From positions 248,001-312,000 of the forward strand of contig CBFFRO010000022.1 of NCBI GenBank assembly GCA_965644265.1: a DNA stretch of 64,000 nucleotides. Direction: 5' to 3'. The translations under genes were made by a program, and so were the position numbers. Below, one piece after another: positions 12,379 through 54,137 of this stretch (the first letter of the stretch is position 1; the number at the start of each line of letters is the position of its first letter). The stretch is from Glycera tridactyla. Taxonomy: Eukaryota. The notes under the pieces were generated by a model. It saw nothing but the letters and a program-made list of their open reading frames with translations, was not told the origin of the DNA and ran no database searches.

Positions 12379-14765
12379 CTGTCCACGCTGGTGCAACTGC
12401 TTCCAAGCAACTCCTGCATTCCATGGGCCACATAAACAGAATGTATTTGAGGTTACCATGGTTACCTGGTGTGCAGGCTTTCTCCCGTGGCCATGCTATA
12501 TCAATATTATCAGGTCTAAATTGATGAAATTGCAGGAGGTAGTGGCTTACTCTTGTAATCCTATATGTCTGGACTGGAATATATCCCATCACCTTCCATC
12601 TCTCTCCATTGCTTCCCTCCCATACCATTTCAGACTTTCCACAAGTCCAAAAACTGACCCATGACTGATGCGAGCTCTTCACCTTATGATATTGATCCAA
12701 ATCAGGATGGGCTTATTCCATCTTTAAGAATAGTCAGACCTCCCTCCCCTTACTTTATAGAAAATTAGGATTGATTTGTACCCTATTAATTCTCAAAAGT
12801 ATGTCTACATATTCCTGTAAACCATATATTGGCTTGATTTCTAACTTTTAGAAATAAGTGAATTATAAAAGTCACAGTGTGAAAATTCTTAGCAGAAACT
12901 TAAGAAATGCATCCACATTCTTTTGAGACCACTTGGCCTGCAAGTTAGATACGTCTCAGGAGCTCCCCATATATACAGGGGATGGTGTGTCAGCCCTGGT
13001 CCTGTTTGAGCAATAAACAGAGCAAACATTTAAGCATAAATGCTCAAAGATACAGCAATCACGAGATAATGTGAAGGTTGGGAAGTTCCTCATGGTCACT
13101 GCTCAGCTTATGAGCTCAGCTTATTATACAGGGAATGATATTTTGGAAGTTCCTTGAAATGGGAAAAATAATATGACCCTGAAATGGTTCAGGGGTCAGC
13201 CGGAAGATAGGGCCGAATGTGTGTTACTTTATCTTGACACACAGACATGGCCAATAGATATATGGACAGCCATCACGACTGCTGCAGTGCTCTATTCAGC
13301 TCGATTTACTACGACCAACTCTCTCCCAACCAACGCTACCAGGCTTTACCGTCAGTTCGCCTTGCTTCTCTTGATTCGTTCTTCACGAGCAACAATATCA
13401 ATGTTTCTTTGAGTAAGATCATTTGCAGTTGTTATTGACCTGAATAGAATCTATCAGAAATGCCATATTTCACACACAGAAATAGTCGAATCTAGCACAA
13501 ATAGTTGATCAATTCATTGTAGAGTGAATACAGAGCATGCAACCTCCATAGATTAAGAACAAGTGGTATACATAATCTGTTGGGTTGATACTTGTTGTTG
13601 AATTCCAAACAGTCAAAGAAATCTGAACCCATACTGAGAAGCCAGTATTTCAGCCATGAGCTCGAATGGCAACTTCTGGAAATGACTTACTCACATATCT
13701 TGGGACTTGAGATAATGCACCAATCAAAGTGTGCTATGAAGTTGGGTCTCTTTCCAATATGTGATTTGATATGTTTCAAGAGGGGGGCGAGATGGACTTC
13801 CAACATCTGGTGATTCTTTTGCTGATGTGGGTAGGTGTTGAGCAGCAGCCAGTTTGCAGAGATGAGCATTGCCTCATATGGTTACCGTGCTTATTTGTAC
13901 CAGGCATGAGTTGGCGTTGATATCAGCTCACATTGGTGTGATGGTGATTTACGGAAGCGGGTCAGCACTCTATTGCCTGACCAATCAGGCATGATGTTAG
14001 CGGGGTTGCTCGCCTGCGCGATCCGCATGCTGCAAGCTTACCCAATGTCAAACCATATGCTGGCCACTCAGCAATTTTCCCTGCCTAAACTTATGCTGCA
14101 TGTGCTCAACTTGAGCATGGAGCATTTTGCTCTGATCCCCTGGGCATTCAATGTGTTCGATTCACATATTCAAACTTTATTTCAATTTATTGCTTCTACT
14201 GCAAATCCAGATAGTGAGTGACGTTAGTGAAACTTGCCTCTGAGCAACTTGCCCAAGTAATGCTATTGTCTAGGTTGACTTCATTCCAATATCTAGTATC
14301 TTGGGGTCACCTTTTTGTCAGAGGGCGATCATATTTAGTGTGTAATAATTGTGATTTATTTCAAGTCCTCGCTGTCCACTTGGCTCTGGCTTCAAGGTAA
14401 TCCTATTGATTGCCTCTTTCCATTTTCTTCCATTGTCAGGTTCCCCCTATGGGATTAGCTGTAAATATTCCCTTCTAGCTGAGGCTGGCACCACTACTGG
14501 CATTCTCTTTAAGTGTAATTAATGATTAAATTATCATCCTCAAACACACACACACATTTTTTGGGTTGTGTACATGTATTCACAAAGATGAGGAAGTCAT
14601 ACCACAAGAACCTGATAAATGTTAAAATTTCTATCCATATCAGTGCAGTGATTTTTTGTGGAACAGAGTGGTGATGAAATATTTCTTGTTTATTATGATG
14701 CCATATTATTATATATGATAAGTGTGTTCATGTTGTATAATCGAGGATGTTTTAATGTGTTACAG

Positions 14766-14963
14766 AGTCCATATTTGACTGCTTCGATGCACAACGCCGC
14801 CCCTTTCAACCCTTATAGTGTGGGTCACGCGGCCTCGATGAACATGTCTGGAATGATCCAGCAGGTGGATACCGGTTCGACCGTTTCACCTAGTGCGCAG
14901 ATGTCCGTGATGGCTGGATCTGGTGTACAGGCAGCTAAAGTATCCCGTGCTGATCGACTCGAG
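14766..14963 (+). CDS. MBNL: Muscleblind-like exon: linker preceding the ZnF3/4-type pair (SPYLTASMHN...AAKVSRADRLE), phase 0/0
   Basis: Acceptor tgtgttacag| at 14765 and donor GAG|gtagtg at 14964; 198 nt with no stop. Ends RADRLE, like the RTDRLE that precedes ZnF3 in vertebrate MBNL, and joins in frame to VCREFQRG at 23392. Confidence 0.88.
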
Positions 14964-17900
14964 GTAGTGCCAAAACTCATGCCAAAACTCCCTCACAACC
15001 CTTATCACCAACAATGACCACTCCCCCCACCCCCTTTTCCTCCCTTCAATCGGACTATGTACTCTCGAATACCTTTCTGAAGGGTACACATCATGAATGT
15101 CCTTCTCTTACCACTCCAATTAATCACTCATGTATCAGCCAATCAAATAACTGATACAGTTTGTATCAGCCAATCAGGAGGTTGCATACATACACTAACC
15201 ACCATCCACCAATCATCTGATGTTACTTTAGTAGAGATTATATTATTTCCGAGAGCATTTTTATCTTTGTTTATGGTTTAGTTTAGTAATGTGGCATGGG
15301 GTGCAATGGTATTCTGCTTCTTATACATCACTCTTTGACAGTATCACAAAAAAAGCGAGAGCCTACGGTTATCGAATAAAATCACCAAATCCCATCGGCT
15401 GGCACTGCTGTTGAATCTTTTGAGGCTGATGGTTGAGGAAATTTCTATGACAGTATCATCATGTAGGTTTTGATGATTATATTTGGTAACCATTTGCTGT
15501 GAGGTTTCATACCGTCAGAGTTTGTACTCATGAGATGTTTGAATAGACTGTCCCATGAGTGCATATCTGATGTGTTTGGCTGTATCACATAGAGGATATG
15601 ATATCTGTAAGGTATCATACTTGATAGTTCATCTTGGGATTTCCTGAGGCCAGATGAGAGAGAAAATCATGCTTTATGATGCATATGACTGAATAAGGGC
15701 TTTGCTAGATCTAAGGAGAAATTTACTTCTCCATGTGTAGTCAAGACTTTGGGATTATCTAACCAATATTTCATGAGCTTTTTCATAGCATTTCACAGCA
15801 TATTTGTTGAAAATATAGCATTGTCAAAGGATAATGAAGGGATTTGAAATGCACAGAGTGTATGTCACTGTTTCTTTTGGCTCATCCAGTTATTTCTTGG
15901 CGGAAATTAAGATATGCTCCAACACAATCACATTTTACAGTGAAATCTTTCAGTTATCTAATGATCACTTTCACAGATTGTGGACATGAAAATATGTGAG
16001 AGTTGTGCTCATTCTCCAGGAGGCCTTTTTTTTTTAGGAACATAGAATTTTTTAAAATCTGATAGGAGAGTGCATGCTGTACTGCACTCAGCAAAGGATT
16101 TAGATGAAATATGGCTTTTTGAGAGAAGGGGGAACTAGCCAGTATGGTACAGTGATCCCACAGCTTTCATTCAGATGTGATTCTAACAGGCTTGATAGGG
16201 GGTACCATAAAGTTTTTGCCAATTAGCACGAATCCTATGGTCTGGTAGGAAATTCTGTGTAAAAGATGCACTGGTTGTGTGGGTGCCCTGTGTTATTTTG
16301 TGATTTATCCCAGAAGAATGACTGCTTGCAGTTCCAAAGGTCAGATTTCATTTCGTAGGTAATGACACTTTTCTGTGGATATTCTTTCATGATTCTATTA
16401 TTTTCATGTGCTATTATGTTTAGAGATTCCATATGTTTTAAATGTTTTGATCAGCCTCATTTGCCATGCATTGTTGAAGTCAGTGAGTGAAGAATGAAAT
16501 TTCATGTGCCTTACCCAACTGAATATGTTGATTAGATTTTTGTTTCACTATGTCCGGGCGTAATTATGCCACAGATGGTAACCGGATTAGGGGCATGGAT
16601 TATTATTTTCACATTTCATTATTCTCACGCATTCCATGGCTGGTTAGAATTTGGTTCAGAGATACAAAATTTAATCTGTGGCATTAAAGGTTTTTTTTCT
16701 CCTTCATGTGGGTTCTTCTCTAATACCATGAACATGATGAGTAGATATATTTTTTTTATGAGTGATCAAGATATCAAACTGTGGCAGTAATTTTTAATAA
16801 AATCTTGAAACGAAAATTCTCATCAATGTAGAACATCCAATCAGAGGACATTGCCAGAGAATTTTGTCCACTTGTCACCACCATGAAACTTTCATTTCCT
16901 AACAGGTGGAACAAAACATTTTTCAATCTTCTGACCACCCAAATTTATTGTAGAGCCTGTTGCAATTTAAGGGCAGTAATTGTGATTTTGTCAAATTGCT
17001 ATTTAGTACTTGGTGTAGGAAGATTGTAAGGTTCCATTTATCAGACTGGTCTATACAATTTTCTCATAACCAAGTAAGGTTTTTCTACTCAAATTGAGCA
17101 CATGAGATACTGTAATCATTCGGTCCTGTGTCAAGTATTCGGAACTGCAGCACAAACCTGATTCTTTGCTTTGTAGACCTGTGGCGTGTTCTGTGCTAGG
17201 TGGCAGCACAACTGATTTCTTTATATTATCAGTGTTGTTAACTTGTTTGTGATTGGTTGCACTTTCAGCCAATGAGATAGCTGCTGGGATATGAGTGCGA
17301 GCCTGCTCTATGTTGCCATGCTGACTGCTATTTGCTCTCTTTTTATCTCTGGCTCTCAATTCTATTTTATATTTTATCAATTTTTAGCTGTCACTGCTGC
17401 TGCTCTAGTACTTCTTTAGCTGATTCTGCTATCAAATTTGGATGATATTTATGAGCCTTCAATTCAGCTTGCCATCTTACTGCAGCTTCTCACTTTTACA
17501 CTTTTGCTTCTGCCACCTAAATTGTCCTTCCCAAATACCTGCTTATCCTGCTCCCAATTCCTTTACTTCCCTCCAAAGATTGAAGATCATAGAACTTGAT
17601 ATACCTGGAAATATGTTTCTTGTCCATATGGAGCCATCAACCAGTCTTGTGTTAGAAGTCAAGTGGTATCTTCCATACCCAATTTCTTTATATTAGTTGT
17701 TCATCGCATAGAATTACTTGTTAATGCTTTCCAACTGGCCAGTTCACAGGTAGCTGAATATGAATCTACATCCCATAATCCATGTCCACCCAGTTAATGA
17801 GATCTTTCTGTCCGTTGTCATGAATTCTGTTTTTAACCGGGGAAGTTGAAAATGATATGGATTTTTGATGAGGTGTAAAGGATGCCATCGGTGTATGCTA

Positions 17901-23280: not shown

Positions 23281-23391
23281 CCCGCATCTTCAACGACAGC
23301 GAGTGTCTCGGAGGCGTCATCATGGTCCGGTGCCGGGTCTTACGCTGACTCTATCGCTCCCAGTTCACAATATTCCCAACTATATTTTCAG
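23281..23391 (+). CDS. MBNL: Candidate 111-nt in-frame alternative exon or 5' extension ([37 protein letters not shown])
   Basis: Acceptor attgtttcag| at 23280, 37 open codons in frame with ZnF3, 9 CpG in 111 nt against a CpG-poor background, ending at CAG|GTATGT. Confidence 0.45.
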
Positions 23392-23724
23392 GTATGTCGT
23401 GAATTTCAAAGAGGTACGTGTGCGCGTCAGCCAAGTGACTGTCGCTACGCACACCCCACTGATAATGTAACGGTTGATCTGACTGACAACTCGGTTACCG
23501 TGTGTATGGATCACGTTAAGGGGAAGTGCTCGCGGGATTCTTGCCGCTACTTTCACCCTCCTGCGCACCTTCAGGTGCAGATTAAAGCCGTTCAACAGCG
23601 GGCTAGTGTCTCGAACGCCGCCACCAACGCTGCTGCCGCCGCCGCCGCCGCTGCTGGTGGCCTCACCTGCCCTGCTACTACTACCGTGCTGCCACCTTCT
23701 GCTGCCCCGCCGCACTCCACCCTG
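23392..23724 (+). CDS. MBNL: Muscleblind-like exon with tandem CCCH fingers (ZnF3/4 type) and a 9-Ala tract, phase 0/0
   Basis: [21 protein letters not shown] (CX7CX6CX3H) and [30 protein letters not shown] (CX7CX4CX3H) match the MBNL signature. Acceptor tatattttcag| at 23391. Donor CTG|gtagga at 23725 is the best candidate; the 3' boundary is less certain than the 5'. Confidence 0.95.
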
Positions 23725-26700
23725 GTAGGAACTCGCTTCCTCTCTTAAATCACAACCCTGAGAGCGAATGCGGATCCAGTGTTGGTGCAACACTGGTCGG
23801 GTGTGAGGACGGGTGTTGCACCAGAACTGGGTGTGCATCACATGCTCTGAAGGGCCCAACTTATCCACTGGCTTCCTCTCATCTCTCTTTCTTCCTATCT
23901 CTCTCTCTCTTCTCACCACTCATCATCTTACACTCACCTCTCACACTACTCATTCCACCTCTCTGTTTCTCTCTCTTGCTCAGTTGCCATGGTAACATGA
24001 CAACATCTGTTCATCTTCTCTACCCTTAGCCTTATATATTTTTTCAAGTCCATCATTGCATTTTGGATACATGCTCCAACTTCTATCTGGGAGCAAATTC
24101 TTTCAATCAATTTGAGAAAAGTCAATTGATCAGCATATAAGGCCGGCAAAAATATTCTCAAATCTTTCCGGAAATATATTTTTGATGATTTTATCCTATT
24201 TTGACAGAGAGTACTTCACACCGAGAGAAGTTGATCTTAATATTTATTCATTCAGAGTTCCATTTTTCTGTCTCTGATTGCAGACATGCATGCAAATTAT
24301 TATAGTTATTATCACTGTTTTATCATTGGGAAAACCGCTGTCATATATTGACAAATTCAGTAATTGCTTTCCTCGGCAAAAGGGAAGCCGGCTAGAATGT
24401 TCTGACTTGGAAAATATATCTCAAAGCACAATCTTCACAAAACAGCTGATTCAATGTAGAATTGATATGGAAAGACATCTCCAGAACTGCACAGAATGTG
24501 AGGCAGCAACTTAATGATTTCAAATTGTGATGAAATGACACCATCAATCCAATCCAGAATGGGTTGGTGAATTGAGAGTCAATTGTAGTCATTCTACAAA
24601 TAATATGTGCTCAGACAACCCAAGATATTCCAATTTTGCGAACATCGAATATCTACCAAAAGTTGGCAGTGCCTTCTTTCGTCCCAGTTGAATTCACGGG
24701 ATGGTCAGACTGTTACTGCAAGATATCTGAGCTTGAGATTGATGAGGAATAGCAGTTCGAATTCATACATGATTTTCATAATAAATCTAGGCCAAGGATT
24801 TCTGGCATTCAGCAATCAGTGCAAAGAATTACCAACAAAAAATCTGAGTAAAACGTCATGCTGAACTACTGTATTCCAGTTTTTCACTAGCTGTTAAAAG
24901 ACACCAAATCCTCTCTATTTAGACCAGCCAACTTCATGGAGGCATGTCCTTCTAGCTCCTTCTCTGACTTGCTACAAAAAACCTACCAACTTTACTCGCT
25001 TACTTACCCGCCCAGAGCCTGCTCTCTCCCTGTCTCTCTCAGTGCCTGGCTTCTCTGTATGAATGCCGCCAAATGACAGTCTTTGAACAGCCAATGAGAT
25101 GCGAGCACACTGTAGATACACTTCCTTTCATGTGCTTGACCAAACCTGCTTCAGCTTACAAAACTTTTTTCCCTCCTGCAGCTAAAGCTATTGCTGCTCT
25201 AGCCGGCTTCGCTTGGCCACATCTATTGTGCTTCAGATGACTAATTCAGTGCCTCTTTAACCCGTCGCCACATGTGTCCACATTCGTCCACGGGTTGCTT
25301 TTGCGATGTAGCCTTTTGCGTACCTTCCAATGTGGCATCGTTTTCACTTTGATCCACTTTGTTCAGTGGATGAAGGTGACGGCTCTGTTTCTGAGGTTGG
25401 TGGGCAAGAGTGGTGCCTATACACTGGCAGGTGGTGGACCAATATGGACCAATGAGGACCAAAAATATGGATGAAAATTCCCGCAAGCACGTCACTGCTG
25501 CTGAGAAATCCAATCTTCACCCTCACTAAGGTTGGGGTAGATCATTTCAGATCCATCATTGGTAGTATACATATTCTACTACTGGATTTGCCGTTTCTCA
25601 AATATTTGACATTGTGACTCAAGGCAAATACATTTAGGAAAAATGAATATCTGGAAATCATTTGTGTCTTAAACATCATATGTGATGATCCATGAATGAA
25701 CCATTGCCAATTAATTTGTTTTTTCAACTTAAAGATGGGATATTTTTTGATGAATCATTTCAGCATGCAAAGATTTTTTTCATGCATCACTGCCATTTTT
25801 GAGTTGTGAATTTCAGTAAATCTTTTCCTTTTGTTTTTTGATGAATAAAAACATTGATGGTTTTTCTACCATAGATGTGGGGAGATTCCCAAATCATATA
25901 AAAACTGTGGCATTTCTAAATTGGGATTGCTTTTTGAAGTTAACCTAGCGAGCATCTAACTTTGATGAGTGGACAAAGCAGAGGGGGGCATTGATTTTTG
26001 CTACAAAAATACAGAATGACCTACCTGATAAAAACCCTCAAACATAAGTGTGCGTGTGTGTGTGTGTGTATGCATGCGTGCATGTGTGACAAAAGATCAT
26101 GTGAATTTGTGTTGGGCATGTTTGTGAAGGACGAACTGACGGAAGGACAGATGACAGACATTGCCCCTATGCACACACATACACACACATTGGTTGTGTT
26201 CAGGTGTGATATTTCAATTGTTAATAACTGAAATGAGATCCCGGACATGTGTGAGAAAATAAGAATTCTCCGGCTCCAATCATCCAGTCCATCAGCTGCC
26301 CCCTGCTTCCACCATCACTGCTTGCGCCCTCACAGTGCAGTAGCATTTAAACTTGCTTTGCTACCCCCTGCTTCATCCCCTCATCACAATGCGCCACCTG
26401 ACCAAAACTCACTCTTCCGGCTTTGCTCGTATTCGAACTGACAACTAAAGTGCGCCAACACAAGCAGGTGACAAGAGATACAATTTTGGCCAAAAGATGA
26501 ATTGCGAGAAAAATGCCACATGTTTTGTCATATCCTGAATCTCATTCATCAAAGAGGGAAAGACTGAGGGGTGGTAAAATATTCATCACTTTGAGTTCAC
26601 TCAGAAGCATTTTTTCTCGTATTTGATTTTTTTCTGAGAGTGAAAAGATGAATGTTCTCATTTATGCTATGTTATGTTGTTTGTTATTTTTAGAACACAA

Positions 26701-34859: not shown

Positions 34860-34931
34860 CCGCAAATGGTAGAGGTCATGACGGCCGCGGGCAAGAAACG
34901 ACCTCGTGACCCTGGCGATGATTTCATTCTG
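34860..34931 (+). CDS. MBNL: 72-nt cassette exon with NLS-like motif (PQMVEVMTAAGKKRPRDPGDDFIL), equivalent to vertebrate MBNL1 exon 5; phase 0/0; absent from the ORF track
   Basis: Acceptor ctaattag| at 34859 and donor CTG|gtacta at 34932; frame-preserving and CpG-rich. KKRPR lies between the ZnF3/4 exon and the KRAA exon, as the KRPL motif does in MBNL1 exon 5. Confidence 0.8.
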
Positions 34932-37759: not shown

Positions 37760-40700
37760 ATTGTGGTGATATCAATAGTAACATGAACAACAATATAAGC
37801 AGCAAATATAACATTGGCAATAATCATATTACAGTTGATAGTGTAACTAGAAATTGATTCCCAAGAAATGGCTTTTACTCAAATTGTGATAGTAGATAGG
37901 TTGTTTTGCTGTGTAGCATTTCCACTTGGTACTGCTACTGCATATTGCATTGAAGCACAGCTGTATAACAAAAAAGATACAACTGGTCAATCCATAACTT
38001 GGAATTCTCATTAAATAAGCATTTGGGTATATACTGGTGGCATGCATCAGGGTTGGCAGTCTTCACTATTTTGTTATATACTTCAGACTCACTATATGTA
38101 AGTCACATTTAGGTTGCAGTGATCTGATATTATATTGTAAGTCATGTCACAAAAATGGATGATCAATTTTAAATAATAGGACACAATTCATCACTCTTAA
38201 TAATGCTCGAAGTGAATATTGCAGCACGAACAATCTTATACAAATTAGTGCTTTCTCGTGATTCTTCTTGTTCATCTCAGGTATCAGATAGAGACAATTT
38301 TGCATAAATTTTGTGATAAGTATTTATGCAGATTTGGGTTGAGGGAATGGGAGGGAGGTGAATGAGTCTTTGAAAATGGTCAGAATGAGCAAGTGTTTCA
38401 CACACTTAGGATCACTAAGCAATCACATGCAGATGTCCAAAAGCCATGCATGAATTACCAAACACTTGTCAGATACACGTCAGCTTTCAGATCAGATCAA
38501 CGTGTCGCAGTTCAGCGTAGATTCGATATAGAGAGGCAGATCTCCCAGCTACTTGGTGTTATTTTCTGATGTCATTGCTATTTGATCTTGTGCTGTCTTC
38601 AGTGTTATCATTTCACCGAATTCTGTTAGGCGTCCAATGCTCAGATTCTTCATCAGAGTGTCACCTATCTGCAACTGCGATGTCATGCAGCTGTTAAGAA
38701 AAATTCATTGGAATTTTCCAGAATTGTTCAAAATGCATTGGTTTTTATGAATTGCACAGTCTATGTTTTCTATGTTCCAATTCATCTCAATGATGAAAGT
38801 AAAAAGTCAACTTAAGTAGACTGTCTCATAAAATTTCAACTGGTGCTCAACATATTGTTAGCAACTGCCATATTATTCTGCTTTGTGCTCTACTGAAAGC
38901 TCAGAATACAGAATAATGTTGTTAGTTTCCCCAAGACGCTGGATGCACAACATGTATGGCATTTGTGAGACTCATACGTTTCTCAAAACAGTGACTACCA
39001 TCTTTGTTGCCCGTTATATGCAACATCTGATGGTTGCATGCTCTATGCAATGTGGGTATTACAACCTCATCTTTCAGCAAATGAACATCAGACTAGAATT
39101 CAACAGATAGGTGTACATTATTGGTGAATTGGTGACAAGCGTGAGGTTGAGGTGCTCAAGATTACTTGAGTTAGCTAATTTATTTGCTTGTTTATCTTTC
39201 ATGAGCTGCATCCCGTCTGGTTCCATTCCAGTTTCAGTATCTGGCTTCACACATTGTCCTTATGCCACACTTATGCCTGTCCAGAAGGCTAAATTTAGCA
39301 GGCACAGGATGTTGGTTTTTGATATTGCTTGGCATGGTCATATGACTACGTCTCTGCCCGAACCTCAATTTATTTGCCTGCCTGCTGTGCAGAGTTGAAG
39401 CATGTATTACAAGGCCTATATCAAGTCAAAGACTGAAGTGTGGCATAACTACAAGATGTCCTATGCATGTGATATGGGTGAGAATGGATGGCACTTTTGG
39501 AGTATGCTATCCCATGGAATGTTGTAGTGGCAAAAGTCTGTCTTATGTGTTTTTCTCATTCATATCCTGTGCGTAGGGCATTATTGTCATGAACTCACCA
39601 GCGTATTGTCAATCATTTCTCACCACCACTGCTCTTCATGCTCCGCTTGGCTTCTGTATCGGCAGGAAGTAAAATTTGCAGCTCAGTGGTTTCAACATGG
39701 TGGCACACACTAGCTTTCTGATTTTTAGTTTTTCTTGACCCTCTCTCCTGCTCCCCCTCTTTTGCCATTGCAAAATCTCAACAGATGATACCCCAGCATG
39801 AACGTGATTTGCCACCACTCGGTGGTGATATCATCAGCTATGAACCCATCTTGTGGTGACCTGTCAAAGCTAGATGCCTCACTTTTATTCTTTTCGAATT
39901 CACCTGGAGGTCAAACACTAATTGGTATGGCTGGACTGCTCTAATCACCTGTGTGCTACTCCGTATTCTTGGTGTCCGTGTGTCTTTATTGAGCTGATGA
40001 TGGCTGAGGCTTGTTTTCTGTTCATATTCGTTGATAACTAATTCAATGTTAATGTTGAAACAGGCACACCGTCCTTACCCAATGCCGGGTGTACCACTCT
40101 ATGTGCCAGGGCCAGGTCAGTAAGCGTATTACCGTAGGAATGGCATTCTTGCAACGGCTTTTAATGTTGCTTTTACTCCGTAAGCAGTTGTGACTCGCTT
40201 GACATGATTATTGTGGCAAAACACTCGCTGCTGCAGGCATATCTTGTTAGTGCCACTTGCTTTTCACTCAATCATTCAGCGGTCCCGATTTGTATATCCG
40301 GTATGGGCTTTGGAACCTGATTGCTAAAAACTCTTGTTTGTGTCAGTGGGGGAGTTTAATTACAGGGCATGGAGAAGTCTCTGAATTGGCTTAGCATCCA
40401 AGATTGAAAATGCATTGACCATAATTGAGCTGTAGATAAGTTCTTTTTTCATCTTAGTCCCTTTTACACTAAACTTGTGTTGATTTCATTAAAATGCTTA
40501 ATTATCTATTTAACAATATATTTATCGACAAAAGTGTCATAAATATAAAATAAACCATGTGTCTTGATGTGGCATGCTGATTGTCCGTTGTATCCGGCAT
40601 ATTTACTATACAGCCCTGTCTGCTAGCCCCCCTCTTCCAGTATTAACCTATAACATGTTAATCTCCTCAGAAGCACATCAAAAAAGCACTTGTGGTGATA

Positions 40701-42599
40701 CGTCTTGGTTAGGTGGATGTTTCTCGATGAAGAAAATCCCTGTCCTATATTGATTTTCTTGGGATAGCCTCTGAAAGGCCAAATTCAGGCCTATCATTTC
40801 ATGGGTGATACCCTAATACATCAGAAACTATTTGAGCATTGACACATCTCGCGTGATCATAATGGAAGTTCTAGTCGGTTCAATGTTTCATTTTTCAAGT
40901 TGATTGGAAGTTGCAAACTGCACTGCAGACTAGCCCCCCGAAATATGTGATACAAGGCGTATGCTTTGAAATAACCCGTATCTCTTTGAGCCATACCTTT
41001 CGAAATTGTCACTTGCCTCTGAATGGTCATCAGGGGCAAGAGTACTACTTGGATATTCTGAGGGTGGATTGTGGATTCAATGGAAGTTTGTGGTGGGACA
41101 CTGGGCAGCAGTTAGCTCCAGTGGACAACAGTTCTGTACATGGAAAAGTAAGTGGCCAGCCTACTAAGTTTTCTACTGGTGTTGACGTCCATTGTCAAAA
41201 GAGATTCACGATCAGGGAGTTCACAGTTTTGTCACTGAGATCTGCATCAGTTTTTTCATCTTTGTTAGTGCTTCCCCAGAGAGTGGAATAGTCAGGCTGT
41301 TAATACTCCATCTACCTTACAGTTGTGTTCATCAGTTTCTTCCAGTCGATGCCCAGTTGGGGTTATTTTTCTACTGTGATACCCACTTCTCTTGGCTAAG
41401 GGTTCTTGGGTACATTTATTGACTTATGCATTGGAGAGTGTTGGATGAGACTGCTTCTTGCAAGAATGAACAGCTTGGGAAGATTTTCAGCTAAGCAGGG
41501 AAGTAGTTTTGAGGATCCAGTTATGAGGCAAATCTGTGAATGGTGGTTTTTGCTTTGTTCATGAGAATGGAACATGATATGGAGAAAGGGATGACTTACA
41601 ATACCCAAGTTATGTGTAATGATAAATGTCGTCATAATCCATCCAGAAAAATACAATCACAGTCAGGAATAAATTAAGAATAAGTACACTATGCTTGATC
41701 TAATTTAACGAAGCATTAGAGATAAACTAACAAAATTATTCAGGAATGGATGTTCACTCGAGAATGCGCTACCAGTAATCATTCCAGGGTAACAAACAAT
41801 CAAGGGTCCAGGGACTGAAGGTCTCCTCCATACATTTCAAACCTGCGGAGCATTTAGAATTCATGCAGAATGATCTAGTACATATCAATACACCAATGCG
41901 GAATAAGTGATTAAGTGTTGCAGACACATTAGCAACGTAAATCATATGAACGTTGATGAGCAGAAGGTCCAAGCATATCTTGGATGTATCATCAGAACAT
42001 AAAGCAATTTTATTGGCCTAAATAGGTCCATATTCATACTGGATTTGTTCCACTCTTTTTCCGCTATGCATCTTGTATGTATTACCAGATCAACGTAATT
42101 TGTTTTCAGCCTTGTGACAGTCTTCACACTGCTGTAGGCTTTCGAGGGTGAATAATTGTCATTGGTTATGTGGCTCAAACAATTGGCTATGCCGCATTTG
42201 TAGAGAAAGACTTAGCGGCTGCCGCTGCTTCGATGTAGCGCACCAATGAGATTGCTTGTTTCATTTCTCGCTCGCCATGGTTTCTATAGTTACCAGTTCT
42301 TTCCTTACTATGTTACAAATGGTCACATTCTATGTTATTTTTTCTGTAAGAGTACTTAATATGCCATCACTTCTCACATTTGGAATGGCAAGGAAATTAA
42401 CTGTCTGTCTGCCATAGTCAGTGTTGTCAACTTGTAATGCTATACACCTGATTTCAATCAAAATTAATAAATTAGTAACAATGAGAAGAAGTGTAGCTGT
42501 AGTGAGACTTTAATGATTTTTATTTTCGTTTTCTCAACAATAGCCACCTGGTGGCATCTAGCGGAGTGTCTACATTTGATGACTTGCTCCGCATTGCAG

Positions 42600-42759
42600 G
42601 GTATGTCAGTACCGGGTATGGTACCTATGGTGAAGCGTGCAGCGGTTGCCGATAACAAGAGTGGAATTCCTATGTATCAGCCCGGCGCTGGTGCCGCGGC
42701 CTACCAACAAGCAGCTCTTGCTGCTATGCATATGCAACAACCATTTGTGCCCGTAACCA
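42600..42759 (+). CDS. MBNL: Muscleblind-like exon-6-like segment (GMSVPGMVPMVKRAAVADNKSGIPMYQPG...QQPFVPVT), phase 0/1
   Basis: Acceptor gcattgcag| at 42599 and donor CCA|gtgagt at 42760. The KR..A...G.P.YQ....YQQ...QQPFVPV pattern is typical of Muscleblind C-terminal regions. Confidence 0.9.
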
Positions 42760-47762: not shown

Positions 47763-47800
<38 letters not shown>

Positions 47801-47830
47801 CGTGTGTGTGTATGCATGCTTGCGTGTATG
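47097..47830. repeat. (TG)n-rich low-complexity region broken by assembly gaps
   Basis: (TG)n runs at about 47133-47178 and 47766-47810 beside N blocks. Confidence 0.85.
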
Positions 47831-47881
47831 CGGCATGTATGTGTGTGTCACATCCAGTAGTCTCTTCATTATCACTCACAG

Positions 47882-48099
47882 CATTTGTTCTCTCTGACTT
47901 CTCTTTCATGCCCTGCCCCATCACTACTCCAACCACAACCTGTTGTTGCTTACCAAAAAACAAAAAACAAAAATCTGCTCACCACACACTGCATGCTGCG
48001 CTACCAACTCACACACGCTTTCCACCAATCGCTGATCTCCTCTCAACCTGCCTTCACCGAACCGACCAATCGCTGGCCGTGTCTCAACCATGCCATCAG
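47882..48099 (+). promoter_or_regulatory. 216-nt AG-exclusion zone with YGCY motifs upstream of the 98-nt exon
   Basis: No AG between 47882 and 48097; 11 YGCY motifs; branch-like CTGAC (47894) and CTGAT (48032) each followed by pyrimidines. Confidence 0.6.
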
Positions 48100-48197
48100 T
48101 GTCATTGCTACCGGGCACACAAGCAGCGCTAGCAACCGGAAGTATGGCGATGGTTACTAACGCCGCTAGCGTCAATTATTTTGACGAATCAAACCAG
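48100..48197 (+). CDS. MBNL: 98-nt exon (M)SLLPGTQAALATGSMAMVTNAASVNYFDESNQ, phase 1/0; needed to put the extra zinc-finger pair in frame
   Basis: First AG after a 216-nt AG-free stretch (catcag| at 48099); donor CAG|gttagc at 48198. Phase 1 matches the 42759 donor (a+tg=ATG) and phase 0 matches the 52495 acceptor. Confidence 0.78.
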
Positions 48198-52494: not shown

Positions 52495-52579
52495 TTGCTG
52501 GACACCCTCCCAGTGTGCAGAGATTTTAAGTCTGGACAGTGCAAGCGGCCACAATGCAAATATGTTCACCTTGTAGAAG
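52495..52579 (+). CDS. MBNL: Exon encoding an additional CCCH finger (LLDTLPVCRDFKSGQCKRPQCKYVHLVE), phase 0/1; absent from the ORF track
   Basis: Acceptor ttgttcttacag| at 52494 and strong donor AAG|gtgagt at 52580; CX7CX4CX3H preceded by the MBNL-type (L)xVC motif. Confidence 0.9.
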
Positions 52580-52734
52580 GTGAGTAAACATGAGATACTT
52601 GTGTATAATCGTGCATACATGCATACAGTAGATATGATTTGTTGTTATTACATCATCTCAATACTCATTGATGTTTTTTTCTCACTCATCAAATCATATT
52701 CATCGATTGTGATTCAGAATTATATCCACATGCA

Positions 52735-52739
52735 CACCC

Positions 52740-52803
<64 letters not shown>
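52735..52803. repeat. (CA)n microsatellite
   Basis: Directly visible. Confidence 0.95.
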
Positions 52804-52804
<1 letters not shown>

Positions 52805-52989
52805 TTTTTTTAGTGATAGAAATCATGTCAGAGACATATTTCCAGATTGTACTGGCAACAGGTCCATGAAATGTGTTCCAAATGCCCAAATTATTTTTTG
52901 GCTTGTATGGGATTTGAACCATCAACCTTCCAGTTTGGCACCCTCGCCAGCAACAAACTGCCAACGCTCTTGTCCTCTGCCCCACGGCA

Positions 52990-53853
52990 NNNNNNNNNNN
53001 NNNNNNNNNNNNNNNNNNNNNNNNNNNNNNNNNNNNNNNNNNNNNNNNNNNNNNNNNNNNNNNNNNNNNNNNNNNNNNNNNNNNNNNNNNNNNNNNNNNN
53101 NNNNNNNNNNNNNNNNNNNNNNNNNNNNNNNNNNNNNNNNNNNNNNNNNNNNNNNNNNNNNNNNNNNNNNNNNNNNNNNNNNNNNNNNNNNNNNNNNNNN
53201 NNNNNNNNNNNNNNNNNNNNNNNNNNNNNNNNNNNNNNNNNNNNNNNNNNNNNNNNNNNNNNNNNNNNNNNNNNNNNNNNNNNNNNNNNNNNNNNNNNNN
53301 NNNNNNNNNNNNNNNNNNNNNNNNNNNNNNNNNNNNNNNNNNNNNNNNNNNNNNNNNNNNNNNNNNNNNNNNNNNNNNNNNNNNNNNNNNNNNNNNNNNN
53401 NNNNNNNNNNNNNNNNNNNNNNNNNNNNNNNNNNNNNNNNNNNNNNNNNNNNNNNNNNNNNNNNNNNNNNNNNNNNNNNNNNNNNNNNNNNNNNNNNNNN
53501 NNNNNNNNNNNNNNNNNNNNNNNNNNNNNNNNNNNNNNNNNNNNNNNNNNNNNNNNNNNNNNNNNNNNNNNNNNNNNNNNNNNNNNNNNNNNNNNNNNNN
53601 NNNNNNNNNNNNNNNNNNNNNNNNNNNNNNNNNNNNNNNNNNNNNNNNNNNNNNNNNNNNNNNNNNNNNNNNNNNNNNNNNNNNNNNNNNNNNNNNNNNN
53701 NNNNNNNNNNNNNNNNNNNNNNNNNNNNNNNNNNNNNNNNNNNNNNNNNNNNNNNNNNNNNNNNNNNNNNNNNNNNNNNNNNNNNNNNNNNNNNNNNNNN
53801 NNNNNNNNNNNNNNNNNNNNNNNNNNNNNNNNNNNNNNNNNNNNNNNNNNNNN
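52990..53853. other. Assembly gap in the intron between the two fingers of the extra pair
   Basis: N characters. Confidence 1.
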
Positions 53854-54018: not shown

Positions 54019-54137
54019 ATTATGTAGAAGTTTTGGACGGCAAAGTAACAGTATGCCGAGATGCGGCAAAAGGGAAATGCTCTCGTGCCATGTGCAAGTA
54101 TTATCATATACCAATACTGCCGCATCTACTTATCTAG
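54019..54137 (+). CDS. MBNL: Terminal coding exon with the second finger of the extra pair ((D)YVEVLDGKVTVCRDAAKGKCSRAMCKYYHIPILPHLLI*)
   Basis: Acceptor ttttatctcatttcag| at 54018; g+at=GAT joins the phase-1 donor at 52579. CX7CX4CX3H preceded by VTVC as in MBNL even-numbered fingers; TAG at 54135-54137. Confidence 0.9.

What the first reader, a model, noticed from the sequence alone, without database searches (positions are those of the whole stretch)
52495..52529. Dual-coding exon: zinc finger in one frame, GHPP...RF* tail in the other
With the 98-nt exon, this exon reads LLDTLPVCRDFK...; without it (a+tt) it reads IAGHPPSVQRF* (TAA 52527-52529). From memory, many arthropod Muscleblind isoforms end FVPVS-FTGHPPGVPRF*, which would mean both frames have been kept under selection across distant bilaterians. 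The alternative stop lies 50 nt before the next junction, at the edge of the 50-55-nt NMD rule, so the short form may escape decay.
Basis: partly seen in the sequence, partly recalled or inferred. Interest (0 to 1): 0.8.

Follow-up and report, generated by a model that had tools for sequence, protein, structure and literature searches.

The report
Two-frame exon in worm muscleblind gene
In this worm's muscleblind gene, the first 35 bases of one exon are read in two frames: one gives the start of an extra pair of RNA-binding zinc fingers, the other an 11-residue protein tail shared with molluscs and insects, and both readings have been kept by selection for hundreds of millions of years.

Summary
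Exon 52495-52579 (85 nt) reads LLDTLPVCRDFK... in frame 0, the first finger of a third muscleblind-type CCCH pair. In frame +1 it reads (I)AGHPPSVQRF, with TAA at 52527-52529, 50 nt before the last junction.

- **Junctions.** RNA contigs from four public runs (two studies) contain 42759>52495. This is the main path. They also contain 40115>52495 and 52579>54019.
- **Tail distribution.** 123 of 225 fetched muscleblind clusters end in the tail motif: insects, myriapods, Limulus, a tick, bivalves, Patella, Octopus, a ribbon worm and siboglinid annelids. 63 arthropod clusters end in exactly FTGHPPGVPRF.
- **Both frames kept.** Seven DNA sequences (this window, four annelid-like and two bivalve-like mRNAs) keep both frames. 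Silent variation in the finger frame is about six-fold lower inside the overlap than outside (Fisher p 8e-4 to 2e-6).
- **Tail selected on its own.** Two tail-only mRNAs, one arthropod-like, keep the peptide with different codons and have no finger in the other frame.

Weak point: inclusion of the 98-nt frame-switch exon (48100-48197) was not seen above intron background in this species' runs. The long form rests on comparative evidence.

Closest known cases are the fly MblC-type C-terminus and the 95-nt frame-shifting exon 8 of vertebrate MBNL1/2. I rate it a new variant of a known kind. This scan had noted the stretch only in this window, not on other DNA.

The parts
52495..52529 (+). Two-frame overlap. 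Frame 0 reads LLDTLPVCRDF(K), the start of finger 5. Frame +1 reads (I/V)AGHPPSVQRF plus stop.
   Evidence: It is 86-100% identical at DNA level among 7 species, against 52-92% for the rest of the exon.
52527..52529 (+). TAA stop of the short (tail) form, 50 nt before the last exon junction.
   Evidence: A stop stands at the same position in all six short-form mRNAs of relatives that keep the finger frame.
52495..52579 (+). 85-nt exon. It codes finger 5 in the long form; in the short form it codes the tail and then becomes 3' UTR.
   Evidence: RNA contigs cover exactly 52495-52579 in 4 runs. Pfam PF22628.
54019..54137 (+). Last coding exon of the long form, (D)YVEVLDGKVTVCRDAAKGKCSRAMCKYYHIPILPHLLI plus TAG (finger 6). 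It is 3' UTR in the short form.
   Evidence: Junction 52579>54019 is seen as a loose end in 4 runs. Pfam PF22628 at E 4e-11. The pair aligns to MBNL1 ZnF3/4 and ZnF1/2 structures at E about 1e-12, tested on the orthologous L006.
48100..48197 (+). 98-nt cassette exon (phase 1 to phase 0) that switches the next exon from the tail frame to the finger frame. It encodes ...LLPGTQAALATGSMAMVTNAASVNYFDESNQ.
   Evidence: The ...NYFD..NQ ending is conserved in bivalve long forms. RNA coverage here reaches only intron-background depth.
42600..42759 (+). 160-nt exon (phase 0 to phase 1) coding the MblC-type region ...MVKRAAVADNKSGIPMYQPG...QQPFVPVT. It is spliced directly to 52495 in the main mRNA.
40064..40115 (+). 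52-nt alternative exon (phase 0 to phase 1), also spliced directly to 52495. It gives ...PLYVPGP-V-AGHPPSVQRF stop.
   Evidence: The loose end before 52492/52495 in runs X1, X2 and X7 matches 40083-40112 exactly.
47800..48099 (+). Intron stretch upstream of the 98-nt exon with 12 YGCY motifs per 300 nt. It is a candidate muscleblind binding region.
   Evidence: The window mean is 3.5 per 300 nt, the 95th percentile 8 and the 99th 13. This is a moderate enrichment only.

Best explanation
This is the 3' part of the animal's single muscleblind (MBNL-family) gene. One 85-nt exon is translated in two frames, and upstream splicing decides which.

**Short form.** An upstream exon that ends in phase 1 (the 160-nt exon ending at 42759, or the 52-nt exon ending at 40115) is joined directly to 52495. 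The exon is then read in frame +1. The protein ends after 11 residues with the ancient MblC-type tail (I/V)AGHPPSVQRF. The rest of the exon and the next exon become 3' UTR. This step is shown by RNA.

**Long form.** When the 98-nt exon 48100-48197 is included, the phase is reset to 0. The same bases then encode the start of a fifth CCCH finger and the next exon a sixth, giving a third tandem finger pair. This is inferred for this species. It is shown by annotated long forms in bivalves and a siboglinid annelid, and by the conserved reading frame.

**Selection and history.** Both products are under selection. The finger frame is the older reading, because it is homologous to the other finger pairs. 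The tail is an overprint on it that became important enough to outlive the fingers in at least some arthropod-like lineages (inferred).

**Regulation.** The switch is probably controlled by muscleblind itself through YGCY sites upstream of the 98-nt exon, as in vertebrate MBNL genes (inferred, weakly supported).
For: - **Gene identity.** The ZnF3/4 exon matches MBNL1/2 structures at E 1e-28 to 3e-33. tblastn of relatives lays out the exons.
- **Junctions in RNA.** 42759>52495, 40115>52495 and 52579>54019 appear in contigs of four runs from two studies. In X8 the 14-kb main contig (depth 80) carries the skip junction.
- **Tail is widespread.** Many of the 56 phmmer hits to the 160-nt exon end 11-12 residues after the match. 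123 of 225 fetched clusters carry the motif, with G3, H4, P5, P6, R10 and F11 nearly invariant. Named taxa are Lineus, Patella, Mya, Dreissena, Potamilus, Octopus, Limulus, Rhipicephalus, many insects, Strigamia and Lamellibrachia.
- **Both frames in one DNA.** Six short-form mRNAs of other species keep the 67-codon two-finger frame intact after the tail's stop. Dreissena has both annotated forms and they fit one DNA. The Ridgeia long form and the Lamellibrachia tail are jointly encodable, while 0 of 20000 shuffled tails are.
- **Silent-site suppression.** Among codons with an invariant amino acid, 3 of 9 vary inside the overlap against 26 of 28 outside. Mean silent differences per codon are 0.10 against 0.61. 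Fisher p is 8e-4 for seven sequences and 2e-6 for the window plus two bivalve-like sequences.
- **Tail selected on its own.** L004 (arthropod-like) and L007 keep FAGHPPGVPRF and FTGHPPGLPRF with different codons at 7 silent positions, and the other frame is not a finger.
- **Finger pair is muscleblind-type.** It matches MBNL1 ZnF3/4 and ZnF1/2 in the PDB at E 1e-12, and the overlap aligns to the DRLEVCREY stretch before the first cysteine. Pfam PF22628 matches both fingers.
Against: - In the four runs laid, the 98-nt exon has only contigs of depth 3.5-4.1. That is the same as stray intronic contigs, and no 48197>52495 joint was reported. The long form is therefore not shown to be made in this species.
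- The runs are assembled contigs, which cannot measure isoform ratios and drop rare variants.
- Only seven DNA sequences, from two clades, went into the silent-site test, and they share ancestry.
- The first 35 nt of an alternatively used exon could also be conserved for splicing signals.
- No protein-level evidence (mass spectrometry) was available for either product.
- The function of the tail is unknown.
Confidence: 0.85

Rival explanations
1. The tail in spiralians is only a by-product. Strong selection on the finger sequence LLDTLPVCRDFK freezes most bases, so the other frame looks conserved without being selected.
For: The finger-frame amino acids of the overlap are almost invariant. Several tail differences between species (A/T, P/A, S/G, Q/P) are silent or Arg-to-Arg in the finger frame.
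Against: Finger-frame third positions are free under this model. Yet 6 of 9 conserved codons never vary in the overlap, while 26 of 28 vary outside it. The tail is kept with other codons where there is no finger (L004, L007). The tail form is the main mRNA here. In siboglinids the finger frame changed from LLDT to SPGI while the tail stayed AGHP, which requires changes that are silent in the tail frame.
Confidence: 0.05
2. The finger frame is a relic in this animal. The gene now makes only tail forms, and the downstream fingers 5 and 6 are untranslated 3' UTR that has not yet decayed.
For: No clear RNA support for inclusion of the 98-nt exon in four runs. At least two tail-only lineages have lost the fingers.
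Against: Five annelid-like sequences keep all eight zinc ligands, the same length and the same stop position, while 26 of 28 conserved codons carry silent changes. That is the signature of protein-level selection. A siboglinid annelid has an annotated long form. The end of the 98-nt exon, NYFD..NQ, is conserved with bivalves. The exon may be included only in tissues or stages not sampled.
Confidence: 0.1
3. The base-level conservation of the first 35 nt reflects RNA signals (splicing enhancers or silencers, muscleblind binding, structure) and not a second protein reading.
For: The exon follows a regulated cassette. The overlap holds one YGCY (TGCT at 52496-52499), and the base after the stop is also invariant.
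Against: This does not explain why the peptide, and not the bases, is what survives in the tail-only mRNAs. It also does not explain why 123 protein clusters from several phyla end in this motif. It may add to the constraint, but it cannot replace the constraint from the tail peptide.
Confidence: 0.05
4. The short form is an unproductive, decay-targeted splice product used only to lower muscleblind output.
For: Its stop lies upstream of an exon junction and is followed by a 3' UTR many kb long.
Against: The stop is 50 nt from the junction, inside the usual 50-55 nt safe distance (established rule, not tested in annelids). The short form is the dominant assembled mRNA at depth 70-207. Its product is a conserved protein ending, annotated in many phyla and equal to the best-conserved fly isoform type (PMC2238819).
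Confidence: 0.03

Closest known systems
Vertebrate MBNL1/MBNL2 exon 8 (95 nt) frame-switch and the dual-coded C-terminal exon
   Same: A cassette exon whose length is 2 modulo 3 (95 nt there, 98 nt here) lies after the exon coding the ...YQQA...QQ... region, and shifts the reading frame of the downstream coding exon to give two C-termini (PMC6530876; PMC13044900). Both frames are reported as preserved across vertebrates (bioRxiv 10.64898/2026.05.28.727796). Inclusion is repressed by MBNL itself (PMC13044900, citing PMC9943662). Here there is only a moderate YGCY cluster upstream of the cassette.
   Different: In vertebrates both readings are disordered tails. Here one reading is a folded finger pair and the other an 11-residue tail.
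Drosophila MblC-type isoform (MblC-specific C-terminal region with the FKRP motif)
   Same: The 160-nt exon plus tail is the counterpart of the MblC-specific sequence (...KRPA..KSGIPVYQP...FVPVS + FTGHPPGVPRF in insects). That region was already called the most ancient isoform, conserved across protostomes (PMC2238819).
   Different: In the arthropod-like mRNA sampled, the tail exon has no second reading. The paper deals with the FKRP motif and does not describe the last 11 residues as a unit or any overlap with fingers. Whether D. melanogaster MblC itself ends in this tail was not checked here.
MBNL tandem zinc-finger pairs ZnF1/2 and ZnF3/4 (PDB 3D2N, 3D2Q, 5U6H, 5U6L)
   Same: Fingers 5 and 6 align over the whole pair at E about 1e-12, with all eight zinc ligands and the short inter-finger linker.
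   Different: The first finger of the new pair has C-x4-C in place of C-x6-C (a two-residue deletion). It is a third pair at the C-terminus, whereas a 2026 review still states one pair in invertebrates and two in vertebrates (PMC13044900). Irion 2012 showed two pairs in insects (PMC3315501).

Membership tests
Muscleblind / MBNL family | Tandem CCCH fingers with C-x7-C-x4-6-C-x3-H spacing, homologous to MBNL ZnF pairs | tested here: met
   The exon at 23281-23745 matches MBNL1/2 ZnF3/4 structures at E 1e-28 to 3e-33. Pfam PF22628 at E 1e-26. Fingers 5/6 match at E 1e-12.
Muscleblind / MBNL family | Binding of YGCY RNA and regulation of splicing | not testable with these tools
Only the sequence similarity of the fingers is available.
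Alternatively spliced dual-coding region | The same bases lie in the coding part of two mRNA isoforms in different frames | tested here: inconclusive
   The tail-frame mRNA is shown in this species. The finger-frame mRNA is not seen above intron background here. Both forms are annotated in Dreissena and fit one DNA. A long form is annotated in Ridgeia and a tail form in Lamellibrachia.
Alternatively spliced dual-coding region | Evidence of selection on both frames | tested here: met
   Finger frame: ligands and length are kept with many silent changes. Tail frame: six-fold lower silent variation in the overlap, and the peptide is kept with other codons in tail-only mRNAs.
MblC-type isoform | Region with the (F/V)KRP-type motif, KSG(I/V)P(V/M)YQP and ...(F/Y)(V/I)PV(S/T) after the fingers, followed by a short C-terminus | tested here: met
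   Window 42600-42758 reads ...MVKRAAVADNKSGIPMYQPG...QQPFVPVT. phmmer gives 56 hits. Alignments to Lineus, Patella and Pinctada proteins.
Vertebrate MBNL exon-8 frame-switch module | Cassette of length 2 modulo 3 between the YQQ-region exon and the last coding exons | tested here: met
   98 nt at 48100-48197. 95 nt in MBNL1/2 (PMC6530876).
Vertebrate MBNL exon-8 frame-switch module | Sequence homology of the cassette and of the downstream dual-coded exon | not tested
Vertebrate MBNL exon-8 frame-switch module | Autoregulation by MBNL binding near the cassette | tested here: inconclusive
   12 YGCY in the 300 nt upstream. That is above the 95th percentile of the window but below the 99th.
Transcripts that escape nonsense-mediated decay by the 50-55 nt rule | Stop no more than about 50-55 nt upstream of the last exon junction | tested here: met
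   TAA ends at 52529 and the junction is at 52579, so the distance is 50 nt. The short form is the main contig. Whether the rule applies in annelids is not known.

The most novel reading that the evidence does not exclude
The whole switch (a cassette exon of length 2 modulo 3, plus a downstream exon read in two frames) is homologous to the 95-nt exon-8 switch of vertebrate MBNL1/2. It would then date to the bilaterian ancestor. That ancestor's muscleblind would have had six fingers, with the third pair overprinted by the tail. Arthropods then kept only the tail, and vertebrates kept only the frame-switch with degenerate remnants. The tail itself (PPG/S followed by a hydrophobic residue, then PRF at the very end) would be a docking motif for a conserved partner, for example a GYF-domain protein. 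That last idea comes from memory of the PPG-hydrophobic motif and is untested.
Probability: 0.3. Interest if true: 0.85.

Novelty: new variant of a known kind. Interest (0 to 1): 0.68.

Why it matters
- **A conserved element with no known function.** Muscleblind proteins are master regulators of developmental splicing and the proteins lost in myotonic dystrophy. Their C-terminal isoform differences affect stability, location and activity. This finding identifies an 11-residue ending as one of the most conserved non-finger elements of the family across protostomes, and it can be tested directly in the fly MblC models already in use.
- **A third finger pair.** Annelids and molluscs have a third finger pair, which current reviews do not mention.
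- **A clear case of two-frame coding.** The tail and the first finger of that pair share 35 bases in different frames. The arrangement is kept in lineages that separated in or before the Cambrian. It is unusual because one reading is a folded domain and the other a short motif.
- **A link to vertebrates.** The mode of switching matches the vertebrate exon-8 switch. This makes the origin of MBNL C-terminal isoform control a testable evolutionary question.

Tried and rejected
- **Genomic DNA of named species.** Look-ups for Limulus (P0079, P0080) and Lineus (P0005) found no record, because only the longest product of a gene is indexed. So I could not test whether chelicerates or ribbon worms keep the finger frame.
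- **An out-of-frame scan.** The first Pfam scan of the last exon used coordinates one base out of frame (protein 3) and found nothing. I repeated it in frame with a clear hit.
- **An off-by-one exon start.** My first codon table used 54018 as the exon start. I corrected this to 54019.
- **98-nt exon coverage.** I considered the low-depth contigs over 47831-48197 as proof that the 98-nt exon is included. I rejected this because stray intronic contigs in the same runs have the same depth.
- **Upstream acceptor variant.** The variant using the acceptor at 47882 (316 nt) has an in-frame stop. It is not a coding alternative.
- **A third-frame protein.** P0056 reads the exon in the third frame (CWTPSQCAEILS...). 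It follows an intron read-through and is most likely a faulty gene model.
- **Paper searches that found nothing.** Searches for the tail letters with muscleblind, for a third finger pair, and for muscleblind in spiralian model species gave nothing relevant.
- **Irion 2012.** The paper does not mention the tail or an overlap.

Full report
**1. What is in the window**

The + strand carries the 3' two-thirds of a muscleblind (MBNL-family) gene with introns of 2-19 kb.

- An exon at about 23281-23745 encodes a finger pair that matches solved MBNL1/MBNL2 ZnF3/4 structures at E 1e-28 to 3e-33. It also matches Pfam PF22628 at E 1e-26.
- tblastn with relatives places further exons at about 14751-14966, 34860-34931, 42600-42759, 48100-48197, 52495-52579 and 54019-54137.
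- Other notes of this scan call the genome probably annelid. In line with that, the closest sequences to this gene's C-terminal exons share its VT-I-AGHP junction, and named siboglinid annelids carry the same features.

**2. The observation**

- The exon starts at 52495 after ttcttacag and ends at 52579 before gtgagt, so it is 85 nt.
- Frame 0 reads LLDTLPVCRDFKSGQCKRPQCKYVHLVE, a CCCH finger.
- The upstream 160-nt exon ends at 42759 with one spare base, A. Joined directly, A+TT gives Ile, followed by AGHPPSVQRF and TAA at 52527-52529. The stop ends 50 nt before the junction. All coordinates in the finding are right.
- The 98-nt exon that restores frame 0 is 48100-48197. Of eight open AG...GT candidates of that length, it is the only one that resembles relatives, ending ...SVNYFDESNQ.
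- With it, the predicted C-terminus runs ...FVPVT-MSLLPG...NYFDESNQ-LLDTLPVCRDFK... through a second finger to LLI and a stop at 54135-54137.

**3. RNA evidence in this species**

Four public runs from two studies hold the 3' end of the gene. They are assembled contigs and proved to be spliced, so they are RNA.

- In all four runs a contig covers exactly 52495-52579.
- The sequence hanging off before 52495 is the last 30 bases of the exon ending at 42759.
- The sequence hanging off after 52579 is the start of the exon at 54019.
- In run X8 the 14-kb main contig (depth 80) itself carries the 42759>52495 junction.
- A second overhang in three runs matches 40083-40112 exactly. This is the end of a 52-nt exon at 40064-40115 with good splice sites. 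Joined to 52495 it also ends in phase 1 and gives ...PLYVPGP-V-AGHPPSVQRF stop.

So at least two different upstream exons feed the tail frame.

The 98-nt exon is covered only by contigs of depth 3.5-4.1 in two runs. Stray intronic contigs have the same depth, and no 48197>52495 joint was reported. The long form is therefore not demonstrated here. Contigs cannot give isoform ratios and they drop rare forms.

**4. The tail in other animals**

A full HMMER search with the 53 residues of the 160-nt exon found 56 proteins. Many of them end 11-12 residues after the match, with endings such as FAGHPPSVPRF, IAGHPPSVPRF, FTGHPAGVPRF and FAGHPPSVQRF. Three word-index searches and two cluster look-ups gave names:

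- Lineus longissimus (ribbon worm)
- Patella vulgata, Mya arenaria, Dreissena polymorpha, Potamilus streckersoni and Octopus bimaculoides (molluscs)
- Limulus polyphemus and Rhipicephalus appendiculatus (chelicerates)
- Strigamia and Chamberlinius (myriapods)
- many insects of four orders
- Lamellibrachia satsuma (annelid)

Over all 225 proteins fetched, 123 carry the motif, with G3, H4, P5, P6, R10 and F11 nearly invariant. Priapulus has a degenerate version.

**5. The fingers in other animals**

Oysters, scallops, Pinctada and Dreissena have annotated long forms ending ...NYFD..NQ-LLDTLPVC...CKYYHIP.... So does the annelid Ridgeia. The 67-residue pair aligns over its full length to MBNL1 ZnF3/4 and ZnF1/2 structures at E about 1e-12. 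The overlap region lies on the DRLEVCREY stretch before the first cysteine. Both fingers match PF22628. The first finger has C-x4-C where other muscleblind first fingers have C-x6-C.

**6. Both frames in one DNA**

Six mRNA contigs of other species that encode short forms were fetched: L001, L002, L003 and L006 (annelid-like), and L005 and L008 (bivalve-like). L008 is identical in fingers 5/6 to a Saccostrea protein. In every one, the tail and its stop are followed, in the other frame, by an intact two-finger reading frame of the same length ending at the same place.

- **Base identity.** The first 35 bases are 86-100% identical in all pairs. The remaining 50 bases of the exon are 52-92% identical and the next exon 55-76%.
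- **Silent variation.** Among codons whose amino acid never changes, 3 of 9 vary in the overlap against 26 of 28 outside. Mean silent differences per codon are 0.10 against 0.61. One-sided Fisher p is 8e-4 for seven sequences, unchanged without the near-duplicate L006, and 2e-6 for the window plus the two bivalve-like sequences.
- **One species explains all variation.** The three variable overlap codons all come from L003, whose tail is changed accordingly to ITGHTPGVPRF.
- **Dreissena.** Its two annotated forms (LLDNLPVCKDFK and FAGQPPSVQRF) fit a single DNA.
- **Siboglinids.** The Ridgeia finger start (SPGILPVCRDFK) and the Lamellibrachia tail (LAGHPPGMPRF) are jointly encodable, whereas 0 of 20000 shuffled tails are. 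There the finger frame has changed from LLDT to SPGI while the tail kept AGHP. This requires changes that are silent in the tail frame. That inference comes from proteins, not from DNA I could read.

**7. The tail without the fingers**

Two short-form mRNAs lack a finger in the other frame.

- L004's protein has an insect-like N-terminus, and its nearest named relatives are insect muscleblinds.
- L007 is of unknown phylum.

Both keep the peptide (FAGHPPGVPRF and FTGHPPGLPRF). They differ from each other at seven silent positions and even in the stop codon. The tail is therefore selected as a peptide in its own right. The frozen codons of the spiralian sequences are what two simultaneous constraints would produce.

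**8. How it most likely works**

- *Shown:* upstream exons ending in phase 1 splice directly to 52495, and the protein ends with the tail. This is the main mRNA in the samples available.
- *Inferred:* inclusion of the 98-nt exon shifts the phase, so that the same bases start a third finger pair.
- *Inferred:* because the finger reading is homologous to the other pairs, it is the older one and the tail is an overprint on it. The simplest history puts the overlap before the annelid-mollusc split. If the arthropod tail exon descends from the same exon, it dates before the protostome radiation, with later loss of the fingers in arthropods.
- *Weakly supported:* muscleblind regulates the cassette. 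There are 12 YGCY motifs in the 300 nt upstream, which lies between the 95th and 99th percentile of the window.
- *Decay:* the stop is 50 nt from the last junction in every species that keeps the fingers, since the exon length is fixed. The short mRNA is abundant, so it is not obviously a decay target.

**9. Comparison with what is known**

- **MblC.** The region coded by the 160-nt exon plus tail corresponds to the MblC-specific sequence of Drosophila. That sequence was described in 2008 as the most ancient isoform, found from nematodes to flies, with an FKRP motif (PMC2238819).
- **Vertebrate exon 8.** Vertebrate MBNL1 and MBNL2 have a 95-nt exon 8 whose inclusion shifts the frame to a new C-terminus (PMC6530876; PMC13044900). 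Two 2026 preprints list MBNL1 (one also MBNL2) among dual-coding regions, and one describes the MBNL1/2 region as preserved across vertebrates. The cassette here has the same length class and the same position. I could not test sequence homology.
- **Number of finger pairs.** Irion 2012 showed two finger pairs in insects (PMC3315501). A 2026 review still gives one pair for invertebrates and two for vertebrates.
- **This overlap.** I found no paper on a third pair or on this overlap. The isoforms themselves are present in public automatic annotations.

**10. Verdict**

The finding is a new variant of a known kind, an alternatively spliced dual-coding region in a muscleblind gene. What is new is that one frame is a folded finger and the other a deeply conserved terminal motif. 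The main open point is direct proof of the six-finger form in this species.

Noticed in passing
window 40064-40115: A 52-nt alternative exon is spliced directly to 52495 in RNA contigs of three runs. If it and the 160-nt exon at 42600-42759 were both included, a stop would follow after 35 codons. The two therefore behave as mutually exclusive routes into the tail frame.
   Followed up: partly
window 47882-48197: A contig in run X8 spans 47881-48197 and ends exactly at the donor of the 98-nt exon. The longer exon version from the acceptor at 47882 (316 nt) has an in-frame stop. Its depth equals the intron background, so it may be pre-mRNA.
   Followed up: partly
window 52530 (base after the TAA): The G that follows the tail's stop is invariant in all seven two-frame sequences, although it is a silent site of the Lys codon AAG in the finger frame. 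This may reflect the termination context of the short form.
   Followed up: no
window 54138 onward: The mRNA contigs that start at 52495 run on for 8-14 kb. The 3' UTR is therefore very long, and it is shared by both forms.
   Followed up: no
window 52729-52989, then N run 52990-53853: A long (CA)n microsatellite lies in the intron after the two-frame exon, directly before a masked or gap stretch. It draws thousands-fold contig depth from unrelated repeats in all runs.
   Followed up: no
P0056 (bivalve-like gene model): A 450-residue database protein reads the orthologous exon in the third frame (CWTPSQCAEILS...) after an intron read-through. It is most likely a faulty gene model and not a third product.
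   Followed up: partly
P0227 (Ridgeia) and P0051 (Lamellibrachia): In siboglinid annelids the finger frame starts SPGI in place of LLDT, while the tail keeps AGHP. The four base changes needed are all silent in the tail frame. In that part of the overlap the tail seems to be the more constrained reading.
   Followed up: partly
window 42597-42606: The 160-nt exon begins cag|GGTATGT, so the acceptor is followed at once by a donor-like GTATGT. This is the same kind of site another note flags at the ZnF3/4 exon.
   Followed up: no
P0055 (Priapulus caudatus, partial): The priapulid protein ends ...YIPVSFADTSSVPANF. This is a degenerate version of the tail, of the same length and with the same final F.
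   Followed up: no
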